In this document: positions 48,201 through 59,622 of the stretch, piece by piece
Numbering within the stretch: position 1 is the first letter of the stretch
Layout of the letters: every line of letters begins with the position of its first letter
NCBI RefSeq assembly: GCF_902459465.1
Contig: NC_047074.1
Span: 14,198,001 to 14,262,000, forward strand
DNA from: Asterias rubens
Lineage: Eukaryota
Direction of reading: 5' to 3'
DNA: 64,000 nucleotides
The notes under the pieces: generated by a model
Databases searched by the model: none
Seen by the model: only the letters and a program-made list of their open reading frames with translations
What the model was told of the DNA's origin: nothing
Position numbers and translations under genes: made by a program

Positions 48201-49219
48201 CTTAAAATTTGAACATCTACATTGTGGTCAGGCAGCACAAGGTATCTTTGGCGGTTTTAAATAAAAAAACCTTCATAAAAAAAAAATCCAAAATTTTCAT
48301 CATCTTTGTCATTGCATGGTAAGTACTACTAAAATCAATTACCATAATACTAGAGCTTATTTAGTGAAAAGTACTGCAGCCGTTGATGGTTTAAACTATT
48401 TTGAGCAAAGGACTCCTTGGAAGATGGTTTTGATCATTTCTCATCCCAAAACATTTAAGAATGAGAACAAAATTAAGCATGACTTGTTTCTTAGATTTCT
48501 GTATGTTGGCCTCGTTTGCGAATGCTGTGACCAGAGACATGGTTGGTACCCACTATCAACTGGCTAAACAAGGATGGAATCAATCAACAAGACTGTAAAC
48601 ATATATTTTGAATGTGTTTTAAAAGCATACAATAAATAAAGTTGTTAACAATAAAAATAGAAACATTTAATAAACATTTAAAACAAAAAATTGTCAACAA
48701 AATTTAAAGTGAAAATGACCAAAGAAATACAAACAAACTAAAAAAAAAAAAAAAAAAAAAGACTTACTGACCTTGAAGAATTCGTCATGATCAAGCATTC
48801 TTTCAAGACGAATAATGGAGTCTTTCTCGCCTTTGGATTCATAGAAAGCCATCTTAGGTGGCAGGTCTGGGACGACATCATTCTCGTACCGTTTCAATTC
48901 ATTCTTGATGGCCTTTAACTCGTCCTCAGAAATGAAACAATCGGCCTGGGAGAGGGAAGTTTTAGAAAAATAAACAAAGTTAGAGTCCACTTCCTGTTAG
49001 TGTTATTTCATTCCTCATGTGACAAAAGGTCAATAAGAGGTCAACCAGCTATGTTTTATTTCTAACTTCTTGGGGTACAGCACTGGGCCCAATTTCAAAG
49101 AGCTCCTTGAGCAGAAAACATTTCAAAAAAAATAATAAAAATATGAATTTTAATATGTTTTCTTTTAATTGTTCAGCGCACAGGAGCATGTTTACATGGA
49201 TAGGCGCTATATAAATGTC

Positions 49220-49301
<82 letters not shown>

Positions 49302-50089
49302 TAAAAAAGATTCTGCCGAGTTTATCTTCAAAAAATGTTATTATTGTTTCATATTGAATGAAAAAATGGTGACGCGATATGGAAAACTTTCCTGTGTTTT
49401 ATTAAAATTTGAAAAACGTCACACCACGATAACCCTACCATGCCTACTCCTAGACTAGATTGTAGAACTATGAGGTTCGTTCCACTACCCTCTCCATGAC
49501 AGCGGAACGAACCTCATACTTTAAGGTGTAGGGTAACCCACCGAATTTACAGTCTACACTCCCTCCCGACTTATTCACTTAACCGTCCTAACAATTAATA
49601 AATACCACAACAAAAATACATTATTAGGAAAAGTTTCCGTATGGCGCCACCACTTTTTCATTCGATATGAAATAATATAGTATCTAATTTACCTCAATGA
49701 TATATCCCTTTTTGTAAAAATTAGTGAAAAAGTGGTGGCGCCATACGGAAAGTTATCCCATTATTATTAAATTTAAAATAGATTTGTGGAAAAATAATAC
49801 CTCAAGGAAAAAATTGACAAATTATGTCAAATTTTCTATCATGTAATAACTGCACCAAAACCATGTCTGTCAAAAAGAAAAATGAATGGTTCAAAATCAT
49901 GAATTATAAAAAAAAAAAAACTAATTTTCACGAAATAGATGCAGTACAAAAACGCCTTACCCGAATGTAACCCTTATCTTTGAAGAAGTCTTTCGTCTCC
50001 GTTTCATCCAATCTTTCCGAGAACCTTGGCCATGATGAAACAACTCCTTCTCCAGTTTTCTGTCGTTTTGATTTGGGAGGGGTGGACAT
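45241..50089 (-). CDS. Phytanoyl-CoA dioxygenase (PhyH) family Fe(II)/2-oxoglutarate dioxygenase, 276 aa
   Basis: Exons 50089-49961, 48945-48772, 48046-47896, 46914-46729, 46211-46160, 45379-45241; 831 nt, phases consistent. Motifs FFKDKGYI, SKPP..TPAHQDG (HxD), TFWLALDDADAENGCLYYVP, HHPYMVHRAGEN (distal His), and RPALGLTY (2OG-binding Arg region). Confidence 0.92.
45740..46137. mobile_element. TTAA-flanked MITE copy in a PhyH-gene intron
   Basis: Highly similar to 40058-40444; right TIR degenerate. Confidence 0.8.
47405..47875. mobile_element. GC-rich element with internal inverted repeats (probable non-autonomous DNA transposon)
   Basis: gggtgcgctcgattagcttccctgggtcgacc (~47553) versus ttgacccagggaagcttatcgaacgcaccc (~47780); ttcacact / agtgtgaa termini. 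Confidence 0.55.
49218..49301. repeat. (ATT)n microsatellite
   Basis: Seen directly; explains the poly-Tyr ORF 49169-49357. Confidence 0.95.
49625..49760. mobile_element. Short palindromic MITE
   Basis: ggaaaagtttccgtatggcgccaccactttttca / tgaaaaagtggtggcgccatacggaaagttatcc with attatta flanks. Confidence 0.7.
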
Positions 50090-51377: not shown

Positions 51378-54300
51378 TTAATGAGCTTTCTTGTGGAGCA
51401 CTTTCAACCACTTGAAGAACTTCACCAATGTTCCTTTCGATCCTGGTATCTCCCGTCCAATCTCAGGGGTTGGTTCGGGTGACGTCACGGGAATCAGTCC
51501 GCCGTTGTCGATCCGCACGCGGACGGTCGGTTGTGTTGGTTCAGGTGGCGTCACGGGAACTAATCCGCCATTATCAATTCTGACGCGGACGGTCGGTTTT
51601 GAGTGGCTGTGTTTTCTATGGTGGTGGTGGTGCTTCTTTGTTGGCCGGGAATCGACCACATCACCCCTGTGCTCTGATTGGCTATAGTGACGGCTGTTCT
51701 CCACATTGATTGGCCAAACGTCTGGAGTGACGTCACGTGCATGCCGGTCATGAGACTTGAGAAGGGAAACTCCAAGCAGAACCAGTTTCAGTTTGAGCTG
51801 TGTGTTTGTCTTCGTGTCGAACACTGTGTCTATAAAATGTCCTTTGTATACCTAATGCAAACGGGAAAAAAGGAACAGAAAGGTCATAATAATGAAGTCT
51901 CGGGCCAATGCCACCACGGAGAAACTCTATTCAGGCAACCAGTTCCAGGCTGAAGTCCCCTCGCTGATCAAAACGAGTATCTCGACCATTTTTGAATCTC
52001 GAAAAGATCGCATTTCAGGCAACTTTTTGACATCCAGATTTCAGTGGTGTCCGTTTGTGATTATTGAAGCCACATAGATGCGGTTGGTATCCGCTGAGTG
52101 TCAACTTGCTACACGTGAATGATTCGACTTTTTATATGAAAATATCGCGACAGGTTTTACTCAACAAGCACAATTTTCAGCTCAAATTTTCACTGACTCA
52201 ATATTAATTTACCATATCAGTATTACATTGACAAAAAACAATAATCTATGACCTTATCTTTAAGATACAAAACAGCAAAGATATGACCTTTATAAGAGCC
52301 ATAAACATTATCAAAATAGGGGGCCTTGTTGTTAATCAGTTGTATACTGACATTTGAGCAAAGGTTGCTGTGAGTTTTAGCCTTGCTTAAAAACACTAAA
52401 TCATTAGATTACATCCTTCGGGTGGAATCGGTCATCGAACTTGCGAGATAATAATGAAAGAAAAAAACTCACCCTTGTCACACGAAGTTGTGTGCGTTCA
52501 GATGGTTGATTTCGAGACCTCAAGTTCCAAATCTGAGGTCTCGAAATCAAATTCGTGGAAAATTACGTCTTTCTCGAAAACTATGGCACTTCAGAGGGAG
52601 CCGTTTCTCACAATGTTTTATACCATCAACCTTTCCCCATTACTCATCACCAAGTAAGGTTTTATGCTAATAATTATTTTGAGTAATTACCAATAGTGTC
52701 CACTGCCTTTAAAGCAAATAATTAAGTTTTGTGATTTACCTTCAAAATTTGAAGAGCTTTAAGAATAAGACTCAACTCTAGTTCTTTCAAGTCGACATCC
52801 AAAACAATAACTGTTTTCACGTCCTGAAATAAACAAAACATAGAGACATGCAGTTAATAAGTAGCTTTATTTAGTTGCTTATTGGACGACCTCCTGGGGT
52901 TCAGACCTCGTGGGGTTATTTGAAACGTTTAATAATCAGGGAGTATTGATGAAGAGGGGAGGGGGGAGGAGTGGGAGGAGGAGGAGGAGGGGGAAGGGAG
53001 GAAAACAACAACAGCAACAAAGAAGAGGAAGAAGCCTTTATGCATAGTGGGGTTTGAGGCGTTGCATGGTGAGGTATCAATTTAGTTTGCGGTAACACCA
53101 TGTGTGTGTCTACTCGCCAGGTAGGGTGTTGTTCTTTAGAGAACTGTCTTGCTTGATTCTACCGCGGAGTAGCGAATTCGGGAGACTTTTCAGTTCTGAA
53201 AAGAACTGTCCTTTATGCATTTTATTGTCTAATGTTATAATAACAATATATCAGCACTCGGCAACTTACCTGTAAAATGTGGATGGCTTTTAGGAGCAAA
53301 GTGAGTTTCAAATCGGCAACCAGGTGACCAGCAAAATGTGACGTCAATTTTTTGTCCTGTAATTAAAAAAATTATGTTTATTATTCAAATTCAGACTTTT
53401 AAATTTATTTAAACACTAGTAACAAACCCTTTTAAATAAAAAAAACGAAGAAGGGAACAGATAAATTGATTTTGTAAATGACAATTAAATTTCTTTAAAA
53501 CTTACTTTTAGTAGCAAGATGGCTTTGAGAATCAATTTGAATTTGAGTTCCTCCGTCATCTCACCGTGGCGAGGTAGCATTCTATGGACTTCATCTTTCT
53601 TTGAGGTCTAGAAATTTTAAATAACCAAAAAAGCAATAATTTTTTAGACAGAATATAAATGACACTTTTATAGAGTGTGTCAAAAACATTAAGCAAGTAA
53701 CTTTGTTAGCAGGTTTCCTCCGTCTTACGAGCTACAGTGATTAAAGGAACTGGACACTATAGGTAATTACTTTATATAATGTCATTGATAATATTGAAGT
53801 CTTATATATAGCGCACTCAAAATAACTGTTGCATAAAAAACTTACTTGGTAACGAGCAAAGGAGAGCTGTTGATTTTTGATAGTAAGTATAAAACATTGT
53901 GAGAAACGGCTCCCTCTGAAGTAACATAGTTTTTTTTAGAAATAGGTAAGTTCTCACTCACTTAATATTAAGTATCTGGAGTACACAAAGTAATGCAACA
54001 AGGTTTTTTTCTGTCATTATTCTCTTGCAAATTCGATGAACATTTGAGCGCAAGTGTTCACTGGTTTGTTATTTTATGCATATTTTGGGATACACTGAAG
54101 TGAGAATATTGGTCTTTGGCAATTACCGAACGAGCCTGTTCACTACATAAATGACACAGAATATTTCTTTTCGTACCTTCAATAACTCCAAGGCCTTCAA
54201 GATTAACTCTAACTTGAGATCATCACGCATCGAGTCGGGAAACAGACCGTCAACATCTATCATCTCATCTCCATCCGTAGGCAGCTGAAAAAAAAATGTA

Positions 54301-54880
54301 AAGTCTATGTTACCAAAACGAGGCTGGGAGGTAAATCGTCTGGGACTCTGTAATGAGTAATAGCAGCTTGGAAGTAATTCAGAAACGTAAATTTATTGAG
54401 CTACTAGTGACTCTTTACAATAGATGGTCTGATATCTTGGACAACAAAAAAATTGCAGATCACGACAAAGACAAAGGACAAATTCTCAATTAACCGCTCC
54501 AGATTTTCGGTAATATCTTAAAGACGGTACCTCTTGAACTGAAATATTTACAATATTGTAGATCCACTAAAATATTGTGAAAGATTAAATAAATCGAGCG
54601 GTCCCAAAACAAAATGTAGGCTTGCCTTTAAGCTGGCGTTTGTGCACGTGGCCTATTCAGGATAAATAAATAAAACAAGTCTACTTACAATAGCGACACT
54701 TTCTGAAGACATGATTTCATCTTCATAGTCAGGGATGCTTTCCGTGGCGTTCATCATAGCATCTTCTCCTCCATGGTCCTTCCCTCCGAAGATGTTGGTT
54801 AAGAACATCACGCATCCTCCAGTTGCGATGACAACCACCAAGACCACAACCACGACCAAAAGAAGTATCTTACAACTCAT
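51378..54880 (-). CDS. Orphan secreted protein, 319 aa, with four exon-encoded Leu/Lys helices, a His tract, a 21-aa repeat and a cationic amphipathic C-terminus
   Basis: Exons 54880-54689, 54284-54177, 53607-53506, 52823-52740, 51851-51378; all introns phase 0 with canonical sites; 960 nt. Hydrophobic N-terminus MSCKILLLVVVVVLVVVIATGG. TATATAAA upstream. The internal repeat differs mostly at synonymous sites. Confidence 0.85.
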
Positions 54881-57978: not shown

Positions 57979-59622
57979 ATGAATCACGGGTCATTCTTAG
58001 CGGTGTTTCTGCTCCTTGCGTCGGTATCTTACCTCGCCAATGGGGACCGCTGGAACCAGGAGTCACAACAGCCACTCACAGACTGGCAGGTTAGCCTACT
58101 TGCCCAAGATCTGGTAAGTTTTATTTTGAAATATAAACAAAATAAATTCGTCTCTTCTGGAAAGTATTCGGAGCAAGTTTTCTTTTTACGGGACACGTTG
58201 GGTAATTTTTATAAGACCGGTATTCTTGGTGTATTTTTTGTTTTGTTTCATTGGTCATCTAAATTTGCAAGAGAATAATGCAAGAAAAAAACCACCCTTG
58301 TTGCACAAAAATCGTGCAAAGTTACCCCTTTCTCAGCAATTTTACTTCAGAGGGAGCCGTTTCTCACAATGTTTTATATTATCAACGGCTCCCCGTTGCT
58401 CATTATCAAGTAAGTTAATTATGCTAATACTTTGAGCAATTACCAAACGTGTTCTGTGCCTTAATTTAGATTTGTGTCAGGATTTAGACGTTTTTGTGGG
58501 ATGGGGGTTTGCTGAGTGGTTTCCTCCCTGCCATTCGCTTTGTGCGACCCTGGTTCGATTGCCAGACTGAAACTTTGCATGTGGATTGGGGTTTTAGTCT
58601 GTTGGCCTAACTAGTTGTTTTCCTCCCACGTCTAAAACCAAAATTTCATAAACTTGTCTTCTTAACAAAAGTTGGTGTGATGTTTCCATTAGTATACTTT
58701 TCCTTCATATTCAGCTTCGAATCGATTTTTTTATTCACTTGGAGGGTGGTGTTTGGGTGGGGGGGGGGGGGGGTGATGGGCCAGAGTGAATGAACGATCG
58801 GATCCAGTAAATAACTGCCACCTCTCGAAATCTTAAAAACATTATTATACCCGTAGAAACTCTGGCTTAATTACTCGGGTGGGATTCCAACCCAAGACCT
58901 TTGCCATTATAGAGCTGATGTCTTACCAACATAGACTACTGTCATTGCCCAGTAGCTATAGATGCAGTTCGAATCCTATATGTTAGCAGCAGGTATTGCA
59001 TCATTTCAAAAGATTTTAAATTTGCATCGTGATAAAGAATGGGTTAGTTTGACCATAGAGGTAGAAATACCATGGTTATACTGTTACACCGATGTGTATA
59101 AGCACTACATACTAAGTACTTTTACAAGTTCTGTGGACAAAAATCACACAGACATATTTACTCGTGTGGGTGGAGTTTCGCTGCCCATGTCTCATGTTTG
59201 TAAATATTCTGTTTTCCATGTAGCCGGACGAGCTACGTACACTCTATGAGCAGATAATTGATCCCAACGTGGATGAGATCAACAAAGAAAACTACATCTG
59301 GCGAAGCTTTGAGCTCCTCAAATACAGGAAGTACAGACGTTATAGTTGGTTCTACTACTGGCTTCTCGACATCAGTGGGTCCGACCAGCAGCAACTCGGC
59401 AGGCAAACTCCAAAAGGACAAGGGGGACGCACACCACCGAACATCGGGGGATACACTCCAGGCGGACGTACTCCGCCAAACATGGGGGGACACACTCCAG
59501 GGGGACGCACACCGCCGAATCTCGGGGGACGCACGCCCGGTGGACGCACTCCAAAACGCGGCGGACAGAGACCACGACAGAGACAAAGACATGGAAAAGG
59601 TCACGGACGCAATATTGTATAG
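57979..59622 (+). CDS. Orphan secreted Gly/Arg/Thr/Pro-repeat protein, ~177 aa (2 exons)
   Basis: Exon 1 57979-58113 (signal peptide MNHGSFLAVFLLLASVSYLANG; donor CTG|gtaagt, alternative CAG|gttagc at 58089). Exon 2 59224-59622 (acceptor ttttccatgtag); only the phase-0 frame is open from this acceptor. Repeat codons vary at wobble positions (CGC/CGT, ACA/ACT/ACG, CCA/CCG/CCC, AAC/AAT). TATATAAA at 57843, AATAAA at 59752. Confidence 0.82.

What the first reader, a model, noticed from the sequence alone, without database searches (positions are those of the whole stretch)
51378..51745. C-terminal half looks like a multi-peptide precursor: RHAR site, His tract, conserved hairpin-like repeat, AMP-like tail
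After helix 4 comes DRHAR|DVTP (R-X-X-R convertase motif), then KKHHHHHRKHSHSK, then two copies of PTVRVRIDNGGL(V/I)PVT(P/S)PEPT, then GSKGTLVKFFKWLKVLHKKAH* (6 Lys, 2 His, no acidic residue). The two 21-codon repeats differ at about 8 codons synonymously (GTC/GTG, AGA/CGG, ATT/ATC, GAT/GAC, AAT/AAC, TTA/CTG, CCT/CCC, ACA/ACC) and at only 2 non-synonymously, which indicates purifying selection on the peptide. Inference: VRVRI-DNGG-LVPV fits a beta-hairpin, the His tract could bind metal, and the tail has the amphipathic pattern of helical antimicrobial or lytic peptides.
Basis: partly seen in the sequence, partly recalled or inferred. Interest (0 to 1): 0.75.

Follow-up and report, generated by a model that had tools for sequence, protein, structure and literature searches.

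The report
Starfish-only secreted protein, conserved cationic tail
The stretch is the last exon of a real, expressed, starfish-only gene (Asterias rubens LOC117298779); its short positively charged end piece is conserved across the gene family, so it may be a membrane-binding or defence peptide, but nothing shows that several peptides are cut out.

Summary
It is the C-terminal 122 codons of a six-exon minus-strand gene (54880-51378). The spliced 348-aa product is identical to XP_033638000.1, "uncharacterized protein LOC117298779" of Asterias rubens. A spliced 1896-nt transcript contig confirms the exons.

Relatives were found only in sea stars, in two subfamilies. No Pfam family, solved structure or paper matched.

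All members share this layout:
- a secretory N-terminus and an acidic segment
- five LKLxLILKALxLLK helices
- a variable, probably disordered linker
- a cationic, aromatic C-terminal tail

RHAR and the VRVRIDNG unit are conserved only in this gene's subfamily. The His tract occurs only in Asterias and includes a (CAC)4 run.

The two repeat units have no processing sites on either side, so a classical multi-peptide precursor is not supported. My best reading is a pro-protein, or a tethered protein, whose tail binds membranes or polyanions. In the membrane-anchored subfamily the C-terminal part may be shed at RHAR. Antimicrobial activity is untested.

One oddity is unexplained. Three of the window's four TGACGTCA palindromes lie in this gene's coding exons. 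Earlier scan notes on this gene came only from this same window.

The parts
54689..54880 (-). Exon 1 (phase 0). It holds the start codon, a 24-residue uncharged hydrophobic segment (signal anchor or long signal peptide), the start of the acidic segment and a conserved NAT sequon.
   Evidence: Spliced translation. Transcript contig X4 record 17 covers 55014-54689. Hydrophobic run and Kyte-Doolittle score of 3.2. Sequon conserved in 4 of 4 subfamily-A proteins.
54177..54284 (-). Exon 2: end of the acidic segment and helix repeat 1 (DLKLELILKALELLK).
53506..53607 (-). Exon 3: helix repeat 2.
53270..53356 (-). Exon 4: helix repeat 3. It contains a TGACGTCA palindrome at 53339-53346.
   Evidence: Its place in the transcript contig is inferred from length: the 173 unlisted contig letters equal exon 4, exon 5 and the junction bases.
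52740..52823 (-). Exon 5: helix repeat 4.
   Evidence: Placement in the transcript inferred from length as for exon 4.
51378..51851 (-). Exon 6 (last exon): helix repeat 5, then the whole C-terminal half that the finding describes, then the stop codon.
   Evidence: Contig pieces from X4, X1 and X2 lie on it.
51735..51746 (-). RHAR (residues 227-230), a minimal R-x-x-R site at the end of helix 5. It overlaps a TGACGTCA palindrome at 51728-51735.
   Evidence: It is the only RxxR in each subfamily-A protein and always at the same position; subfamily B lacks it. Palindrome.
51639..51734 (-). Variable linker (residues 231-262). AlphaFold2 predicts no structure here.
   Evidence: pLDDT 33-37. Apart from DVxxxWP it does not align with the Valvatida orthologues.
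51597..51638 (-). His/Lys tract KKHHHHHRKHSHSK. It includes (CAC)4 and occurs only in Asterias.
   Evidence: Absent in Patiria and Acanthaster.
51531..51596 (-). Repeat unit 1 (PTVRVRIDNGGLVPVTPPEPTQ).
   Evidence: This is the unit that changed in A. amurensis (VRV to VSG).
51465..51530 (-). Repeat unit 2 (PTVRVRIDNGGLIPVTSPEPTP). It contains a TGACGTCA palindrome at 51480-51487.
   Evidence: 12 of 15 residues are identical to the single Patiria unit, 4 of them with different codons.
51381..51464 (-). Pre-tail (EIGREIPG) plus the cationic aromatic tail. Net charge is +5, with 2 His. A helix is predicted at residues 329-346.
   Evidence: F337 and K338 are invariant across 9 sequences of both subfamilies. 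Codon comparison.

Best explanation
The stretch is the C-terminal half of a sea-star-restricted protein of the secretory pathway (A. rubens LOC117298779, which I call subfamily A of a small uncharacterised family).

Shown:
- The gene is real, spliced and transcribed.
- The protein has a hydrophobic N-terminus, an acidic segment and a helical domain of five exon-sized LKLxLILKALxLLK repeats. A linker with no confident predicted structure follows, then a cationic Lys/Trp/Phe tail at the very C-terminus.
- The helical domain and the tail are conserved across both subfamilies.
- RHARDV and the 14-residue VRVRIDNG motif are conserved in subfamily A only.
- The His tract is found only in Asterias.

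Inferred mechanism:
- The tail is the working end. It is an amphipathic helix that binds anionic surfaces, either membranes or sulfated or other polyanions. The flexible, probably O-glycosylated Pro/Thr-rich linker holds it away from the helical domain.
- Before it is used, the acidic N-terminal segment may neutralise it.
- In subfamily A the long N-terminal hydrophobic segment probably acts as a type II membrane anchor. A furin-type convertase would then cut at RHAR|DV and shed a 118-residue fragment. That fragment would carry the His tract, both motif copies and the tail.
- The VRVRIDNG copies are binding motifs inside this fragment. They are not peptides that are released separately.
- Host defence is the most plausible biological role, but it is not shown.
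For: Gene and transcript:
- Six phase-0 exons with GT-AG borders.
- The spliced product is identical to XP_033638000.1.
- An 1896-nt contig from run X4 lies on exons 1, 2, 3 and 6; its unlisted letters fit exons 4 and 5 by length.

Family range:
- Only Asteroidea proteins were found in three word-indexed searches and one exhaustive HMMER search.
- Members come from Forcipulatida and Valvatida.
- A subfamily-B paralogue exists in A. rubens itself.

Conservation:
- The tail is conserved in both subfamilies, with synonymous codon turnover.
- Every member has an acidic N-segment (charge -5 to -13) and a cationic tail (+5 to +9), while the linker varies from 42 to 148 residues.

Structure prediction:
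- The helical domain has pLDDT 65-89 and the C-terminal half is below 45, with a terminal helix at 329-346.
- In the paralogue P0010 the tail helix has pLDDT 52-60.

Anchor and cleavage site vary together:
- Subfamily A has a 24-residue uncharged run (Kyte-Doolittle about 3.0-3.2) and has RHAR.
- Subfamily B has a 15-19-residue signal-peptide-like run and lacks RHAR.

Lumenal exposure: an NxT sequon just after the hydrophobic segment is conserved in 4 of 4 subfamily-A proteins.
Against: - RHAR lacks the basic P2 residue of the full furin consensus, and no cleavage product has been observed.
- R-D-V coincides with a TGACGTCA palindrome that is conserved at the DNA level in Patiria. Conservation there may not be about proteolysis.
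- The N-terminus may simply be a long signal peptide cleaved near ATGG|C, which aligns with SSQA|Y of subfamily B. In that case no shedding is needed.
- The amphipathicity of the A. rubens tail is no better than shuffles of its own residues (p about 0.2).
- The predicted tail helix has low confidence.
- Asterias lacks the dibasic site that precedes the tail in five of the relatives.
- The tissue of expression is unknown.
- No mention was found in the searched literature or in the three proteomic supplements that could be read.
Confidence: 0.4

Rival explanations
1. The protein is an unprocessed modular extracellular protein of mucus, adhesive, matrix or secretory granules. It stays in one piece. 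The tail attaches it to membranes, sulfated glycans or a granule matrix, the linker is a glycosylated spacer, and the His tract and VRVRIDNG motifs add cross-linking or binding sites.
For: - The linker varies in length and is 22-34% Ser/Thr/Pro. In subfamily B it is Thr/Glu-rich and mucin-like.
- Subfamily B has no RxxR at the RHAR position, and P0012 has no dibasic site before the tail. Release therefore cannot be a requirement for the whole family.
- The tail contains basic clusters of the heparin-binding kind, such as HKKAH (sequence; resemblance recalled from general knowledge).
Against: - The single RHAR is conserved in all subfamily-A members.
- Five of the relatives have KK, KR or KKKK directly before the tail.
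- The protein was not found in the held supplements of an A. rubens coelomocyte proteome or of Acanthaster nerve-cord and spine-secretion proteomes. This is weak evidence, because only text held in the library could be searched.
Confidence: 0.28
2. The protein is a dedicated host-defence peptide precursor with cathelicidin-like logic. The conserved pro-region and acidic segment keep the cationic tail inactive. A protease then frees a peptide of about 17-28 residues that permeabilises microbial membranes. The His tract adds a histatin-like, metal-dependent activity.
For: - The tail has charge +5 to +9, 3-5 Trp/Phe, and a predicted helix.
- An acidic N-segment is present in every member.
- Dibasic sites precede the tail in five of the relatives, and an Arg about 10 residues upstream is conserved in most members.
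- The rate ratio between A. rubens and A. amurensis is about 0.45, which suggests moderately fast evolution. It rests on only 19 substitutions.
Against: - In real antimicrobial-peptide families the mature peptide is usually the variable part. Here it is the most conserved part.
- Asterias has SKG, not a dibasic site, before the tail.
- The His tract occurs only in Asterias.
- There is no sequence or profile match to any solved peptide structure.
- ESM Atlas feature scores of 0.65 or less are uninformative.
- There are no activity or expression data.
Confidence: 0.2
3. The tail is a ligand for the protein's own helical domain. It docks on the TPR-like helical-repeat domain, as the last helix or as a peptide in a groove, and regulates that domain's binding activity.
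For: - In the P0010 model, structural matches to TPR-like peptide-binding domains (LGN/Pins, kinesin light chain, PlcR, NprR) extend through model residues 262-282, which is the tail helix.
- ESM Atlas shape hits are also TPR-like.
Against: - Z is 9.2 or less and TM is below 0.5. The tool's own notes place this within the range of unrelated helical repeats.
- Tail pLDDT is only 52-60.
- An HMM of the 35 helix repeats scores the tails no better than shuffles, so the tail is not a sixth repeat.
- In A. rubens the helical domain is itself net positive (+5).
Confidence: 0.08
4. The protein is a classical multi-peptide (neuro)peptide precursor. RHAR, the His tract, each repeat unit and the tail are cut apart and released as separate bioactive peptides.
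For: - A secretory N-terminus, a repeated conserved unit and a conserved RxxR.
- A. rubens transcript contigs exist. Their tissue of origin is unknown, because run identities are coded.
Against: - The units have no mono- or dibasic sites on either side. Each is preceded by K-P or Q-P and followed by P or Q.
- There is no C-terminal Gly for amidation.
- Patiria has only one unit.
- The protein is not among the A. rubens neuropeptide precursors, as far as the held supplement text shows.
- At 348 residues with a 150-residue folded domain, it is unlike the 88-233-residue precursors described there.
Confidence: 0.04

Closest known systems
Host-defence peptide precursors with a C-terminal cationic peptide (cathelicidin-type, amphibian dermaseptin-type); named from general knowledge
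   Same: A secretory signal, an anionic or conserved pro-region, and a short Lys-rich peptide at the C-terminus that is predicted to be helical. Basic residues lie directly before it in most family members.
   Different: There is no cathelin or cystatin-like domain: Pfam finds nothing, and the A. rubens protein has no Cys beyond the N-terminal hydrophobic segment. Here the tail is the conserved part rather than the hypervariable one. The processing site is missing in Asterias. No activity is known.
Type II membrane proteins shed by furin (BRI2/ITM2B, ectodysplasin, BAFF/APRIL); named from general knowledge
   Same: An N-terminal hydrophobic anchor-like segment plus a single conserved R-x-x-R in the exoplasmic part. 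The anchor and the site occur together in subfamily A and are both absent in subfamily B.
   Different: There is no BRICHOS or TNF domain. The site is only the minimal motif, without a basic P2 residue. Neither topology nor cleavage has been shown.
Echinoderm neuropeptide precursors (Semmens et al. 2016, PMC4772807)
   Same: Same species, a secretory signal and a tandemly repeated peptide unit.
   Different: No cleavage sites flank the units and there is no amidation signal. The protein is much larger and has a folded helical domain. Its peptide strings do not occur in that paper's held supplement text.
Histatin-like His-rich cationic peptides; named from general knowledge
   Same: A tract rich in Lys, Arg and His (7 His in 14 residues).
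   Different: The tract occurs only in Asterias, includes a (CAC)4 run, and is embedded in a larger protein. No evidence of release or metal binding.
TPR-like alpha-solenoid peptide-binding domains (LGN/Pins, kinesin light chain, PlcR/NprR)
   Same: The predicted helical domain superposes on these folds (Z 8-9, 118-135 residues aligned).
   Different: The scores are within the noise range for helical repeats. There is no sequence similarity. Those proteins are cytosolic, whereas this one enters the secretory pathway.

Membership tests
Classical neuropeptide / multi-peptide prohormone | N-terminal signal peptide | tested here: inconclusive
   There is a hydrophobic N-terminus, but it is 24 uncharged residues long with a Kyte-Doolittle score of 3.2, which looks more like a membrane anchor. 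Subfamily B has a typical 15-19-residue signal. No SignalP-type tool was available.
Classical neuropeptide / multi-peptide prohormone | Mono- or dibasic cleavage sites on both sides of each putative peptide | tested here: not met
   Unit 1 is preceded by SK-P and followed directly by unit 2 (Q-P). Unit 2 is followed by PEIGR. The only dibasic pairs nearby are inside the His tract. Criteria taken from PMC4772807.
Classical neuropeptide / multi-peptide prohormone | C-terminal Gly for amidation before the cleavage site (often present) | tested here: not met
   The units end in PEPTQ and PEPTP. The Gly-Gly pair is internal.
Furin / proprotein convertase substrate | R-x-[K/R]-R consensus | tested here: not met
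   Only the minimal R-H-A-R is present. Patiria and Acanthaster add an Arg at P5 (RRHAR).
Furin / proprotein convertase substrate | Site conserved in orthologues and lying in an exposed segment | tested here: met
   It is the only RxxR, at the same position, in 4 of 4 subfamily-A proteins. It lies where the predicted helix 207-226 ends and the low-pLDDT region begins.
Furin / proprotein convertase substrate | Cleavage actually occurs | not testable with these tools
   This needs mass spectrometry or an in vitro digest.
Alpha-helical cationic antimicrobial peptide | Short, net cationic, about half hydrophobic | tested here: met
   The last 21 residues have charge +6, 2 His and no acidic residue. 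Relatives have +6 to +9.
Alpha-helical cationic antimicrobial peptide | Amphipathic helix | tested here: inconclusive
   The best 11-mer moment is 0.63, with p about 0.2 against shuffles in A. rubens and 0.008-0.05 in four relatives. AlphaFold2 draws a helix at pLDDT below 45, or 52-60 in the paralogue.
Alpha-helical cationic antimicrobial peptide | Released as a free peptide and kills microbes | not testable with these tools
   No peptidomic or activity data were found.
Cathelicidin | Cathelin (cystatin-like) pro-domain with four conserved Cys | tested here: not met
   No Pfam match for any exon. There is no Cys after residue 30 in the A. rubens protein.
KKXX (di-lysine) ER-retrieval membrane protein | Lys at positions -3 and -4 of a cytosolic C-terminus, conserved in the family | tested here: not met
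   KKAH and KKGH fit the letters in Asterias and Patiria. Acanthaster ends in KWLP and subfamily B in HLIFH or HHVFH. The N-terminal Lys/Arg residues, the cleavable-type signals of subfamily B and the conserved NxT sequon all argue for an exoplasmic C-terminus.
TPR / helical-repeat superfamily | Significant sequence or structural match | tested here: inconclusive
   VIA Z is 9.2 or less, ESM Atlas TM 0.43 or less and Foldseek E 0.016 or more. There is no Pfam TPR hit.

The most novel reading that the evidence does not exclude
This would be the first gene-encoded host-defence peptide system specific to sea stars. A helical-repeat pro-domain carries a conserved Trp/Lys tail peptide on a flexible stalk. 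In one subfamily the protein is membrane-anchored and armed by furin-type shedding at RHAR. Its transcription may be driven or tuned by CREB/ATF-type palindromes that have accumulated inside the coding exons, in two different reading frames.
Probability: 0.12. Interest if true: 0.65.

Novelty: new variant of a known kind. Interest (0 to 1): 0.4.

Why it matters
Few gene-encoded antimicrobial or membrane-active peptides are known from sea stars. This family gives a concrete candidate that is cheap to test: a conserved 17-28-residue tail that can be synthesised. The two subfamilies also form a natural comparison, one apparently membrane-anchored with an RxxR site and one soluble without it.

The family also illustrates how a lineage-restricted secreted protein can be built. 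Five helices each have their own phase-0 exon. The linker keeps gaining low-complexity inserts and motif duplications.

If the tail proves inert, the gene is simply one more orphan secreted protein.

The excess of TGACGTCA palindromes in the coding sequence is a separate small puzzle about DNA-level constraint inside exons.

Tried and rejected
- Pfam scan of every exon product: no family. The only matches were sub-threshold hits to the hydrophobic N-terminus.
- ESM Atlas feature search of exon 6 and of the helical domain: best scores were 0.65 and 0.53, which is uninformative.
- Foldseek against AlphaFold DB clusters and the PDB with the A. rubens model: nothing reached TM 0.25 by query length.
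- PDB sequence search with the tail alone and with the family profile: only designed toroid repeats, at E of 0.3 or more.
- Idea that the tail is a degenerate sixth copy of the helix repeat: rejected. An HMM built from 35 repeats scores the real tails no better than 2000 shuffles.
- Idea that KKAH is a KKXX ER-retrieval signal: rejected on topology and on lack of conservation.
- Idea that the palindromes create an exceptional RNA structure: the two GUGACGUCAC copies pair in the minimum-energy fold, but the z-score is -0.61.
- Literature: no paper holds the accession numbers or the peptide strings. Nothing was found in the held supplements of an A. rubens coelomocyte proteome, two Acanthaster proteomes or the neuropeptide catalogue. 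The supplements of the A. rubens footprint paper are not held.
- Raw RNA reads of run X10 (organism C) gave almost no coverage of the exons, so they say nothing about expression.
- tblastn of family members against the window: no second copy in these 64 kb.
- The Acanthaster orthologue's DNA could not be fetched.
Full report
**1. What is there**

The finding lies on the minus strand. Reading that strand shows a six-exon gene with GT-AG borders, and every exon is in phase 0. The exons are 54880-54689, 54284-54177, 53607-53506, 53356-53270, 52823-52740 and 51851-51378.

The spliced product has 348 residues. It is identical to a database protein that an exhaustive HMMER search returned. That protein is XP_033638000.1, "uncharacterized protein LOC117298779 [Asterias rubens]".

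A public-run contig of 1896 nt (run X4, record 17, depth 58) lies on 55014-54689, 54284-54177, 53607-53505 and 51848-51100. Its 173 unlisted letters match exons 4 and 5 plus junction bases by length. The exon model is therefore that of a real spliced transcript. Shorter contigs from runs X1 and X2 also lie on the last exon.

A TATATAA box sits at 55064-55058, just upstream of the contig's 5' end. An ATTAAA at 50679-50674 fits its 3' end.

**2. Checking the observation**

All four elements are present as described (details are in the observation check):
- RHAR followed by DVTP
- the His/Lys tract
- two tandem 66-nt units
- a 21-residue tail with six Lys, two His and no acidic residue

The two units differ at eight codons synonymously and at three of 22 non-synonymously. 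That gives dN/dS of 0.08.

**3. Relatives**

Relatives were found only in sea stars. I ran three word-indexed searches: the full protein, a five-sequence profile, and the helical region of a paralogue. I also ran one exhaustive HMMER search with the last exon.

The family has two subfamilies.

| Feature | Subfamily A (this gene) | Subfamily B |
|---|---|---|
| Members found | A. rubens, A. amurensis, Acanthaster planci, Patiria miniata | Two Patiria genes, one Acanthaster, one A. amurensis, A. rubens LOC117302151 |
| N-terminus | 24-residue uncharged hydrophobic run | Typical 15-19-residue signal peptide |
| After helix 5 | RHARDV | NWPIDID |
| Linker | One or two VRVRIDNG units | Thr/Glu-rich, no VRVRIDNG |
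| Tail | Cationic, aromatic | Cationic, aromatic |

Members come from Forcipulatida and Valvatida. The helical region of Patiria P0010 (subfamily B) is 67% identical to the subfamily-B protein of A. amurensis. It is only 46-48% identical to subfamily-A proteins. The two subfamilies therefore separated before the two orders did.

No Pfam family, solved structure or paper covers the family.

**4. Architecture**

Every member has the same five parts:
- a secretory N-terminus
- an acidic segment, with charge -5 to -13
- a helical domain of five repeats with the core LKLxLILKALxLLK
- a linker of 42-148 residues that is rich in Ser, Thr and Pro
- a tail with charge +5 to +9 and three to five Trp/Phe

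In this gene the first four repeats each occupy their own phase-0 exon. The fifth opens the last exon.

AlphaFold2 gives the helical domain pLDDT 65-89. The whole C-terminal half scores below 45, and a helix is drawn at residues 329-346. In the paralogue P0010 the tail helix reaches pLDDT 52-60.

Structure searches return only TPR-like helical repeats, at scores inside the noise range for such folds.

**5. What is conserved in the C-terminal half**

- **Tail.** It is conserved across both subfamilies, and F337 and K338 are invariant in nine sequences. Between Asterias and Patiria, 12 of 18 tail-core residues are identical, and 8 of those use different codons. Acanthaster's protein stops at KWLP. 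The shared core is therefore K-x-F-K-W/F-L/F-K rather than the final HKKxH.
- **RHAR.** It is the only RxxR in each subfamily-A protein and always sits at the same place. Subfamily B lacks it.
- **VRVRIDNG unit.** It is conserved in subfamily A. Asterias and Acanthaster have two copies and Patiria has one. The copies sit differently relative to a shared GEVD-like spacer. Within each species the copies resemble each other more than those of the other species. I therefore infer independent duplications or gene conversion.
- **His tract.** It exists only in the two Asterias species and includes a (CAC)4 run. This points to a recent slippage insert.
- **A. rubens versus A. amurensis.** In the last exon, the few changes fall in helix 5, the linker and unit 1, with one silent change in the tail. 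None alters RHAR, unit 2 or the tail's protein sequence, apart from a two-residue insertion in unit 2. With only 19 substitutions in the whole gene (ratio about 0.45), this says little.

**6. Interpretation**

A classical multi-peptide precursor is unlikely, for three reasons:
- The units have no basic sites on either side and no amidation Gly. These are the criteria used for A. rubens neuropeptide precursors.
- The peptide strings do not occur in that paper's held supplement text.
- A 150-residue folded domain is not what such precursors look like.

The evidence supports a modular secretory protein whose conserved working end is the cationic aromatic tail.

Two observations make processing plausible. 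First, the long hydrophobic anchor-like N-terminus and RHAR occur together in subfamily A and are both absent from subfamily B. This fits shedding of the C-terminal part from a type II anchor. Second, KK, KR or KKKK directly precedes the tail in five of the relatives.

Several points count against processing:
- Asterias has SKG before the tail instead of a dibasic site.
- RHAR is only the minimal motif.
- The N-terminus could be a long cleaved signal peptide.
- The A. rubens tail's amphipathic moment is not better than shuffles of its own residues.

I put 0.4 on the shed-fragment, surface-binding-tail reading. I put 0.28 on an unprocessed tethered protein and 0.2 on a dedicated antimicrobial precursor. 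Cis-docking of the tail and the neuropeptide reading get smaller shares.

**7. An unexplained extra**

The CRE-type palindrome TGACGTCA occurs four times in the 64-kb window, against 0.48 expected. Three of the four are inside this gene's coding exons:
- exon 4, across codons L-T-S
- the RHAR|DVT site, across codons R-D-V-T
- repeat unit 2, across codons V-T-S

The three sites use two different reading frames.

I held the protein sequence fixed and permuted synonymous codons, keeping the gene's own codon usage. The expected count is 0.12, and none of 20,000 trials reached three.

The A. amurensis gene has four such sites and none elsewhere in 15.7 kb. The Patiria gene has one, at the same R-D-V position, and none elsewhere in 22.5 kb.

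The RNA fold of the region is not exceptional (z = -0.61).

I cannot explain this excess. It does mean that conservation of R-D-V need not be only about a protease site.

**8. Novelty and score**

The gene is annotated but uncharacterised, and the family is undescribed. By logic it resembles pro-proteins with a C-terminal cationic peptide, but it meets none of the membership criteria of a named family.

It is a reasonable and cheap experimental candidate rather than a surprise. Interest is 0.4.

The scan's earlier notes on this gene come from this same window only.

Noticed in passing
window 53339-53346, 51728-51735, 51480-51487; L002 7994, 9380, 9562, 9634; L001 12250: The CRE-type palindrome TGACGTCA (mostly as GTGACGTCAC) is strongly over-represented inside this gene's coding exons, in two reading frames. 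Three of the window's four copies lie here. With the protein sequence and codon usage held fixed, 0.12 are expected, and none of 20,000 trials reached three. The site at the R-D-V codons is also present in Patiria. Its meaning is unknown.
   Followed up: partly
window 57979-59622 (+); L002 1130-2874; L001 7170-7334: The head-to-head neighbour is another orphan secreted gene, with an aromatic-cationic core and GGRTPP repeats. It keeps its divergent position next to the orthologue in A. amurensis and in Patiria miniata (57% identity over 56 aa, E 4e-16). The gene pair is therefore conserved across two sea-star orders.
   Followed up: partly
window 52306-52841, 53780-54181, 52976-53243: Introns 5, 2 and 4 carry copies of very abundant interspersed repeats (summed contig depth 1e4 to 4e6 in all runs). 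The intron-2 and intron-5 copies belong to the same family and lie in opposite orientation. Many contigs join them as 'opposite strands' or 'goes back'.
   Followed up: no
P0002 (Patiria XP_038050920) residues about 157-167; P0017 (Acanthaster isoform X1): Both gene models carry short inserts (YSLIFFLFNFQ and YGNFQ) exactly at the exon 4/5 junction. These probably come from alternative or mis-called splice donors. Both Acanthaster isoforms end at KWLP and lack the final VLHKKxH.
   Followed up: no
elsewhere in the A. rubens genome (P0015, LOC117302151): A. rubens has a subfamily-B paralogue of 342 aa. It has a classical signal peptide, a Thr/Glu-rich linker, an RRGR site about 20 residues before the tail, and the tail core QVFKWLKWVPK.
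   Followed up: partly
window 51668-51660: An RGD tripeptide lies in the linker (EHRGDVV). It is present only in Asterias; Patiria has GEVD and Acanthaster has GGEVD at the equivalent place. This is probably chance.
   Followed up: no
window 49169-49357: A long (TAT)n/(ATA)n microsatellite reads as poly-Tyr or poly-Asn ORFs. It is not a gene.
   Followed up: no
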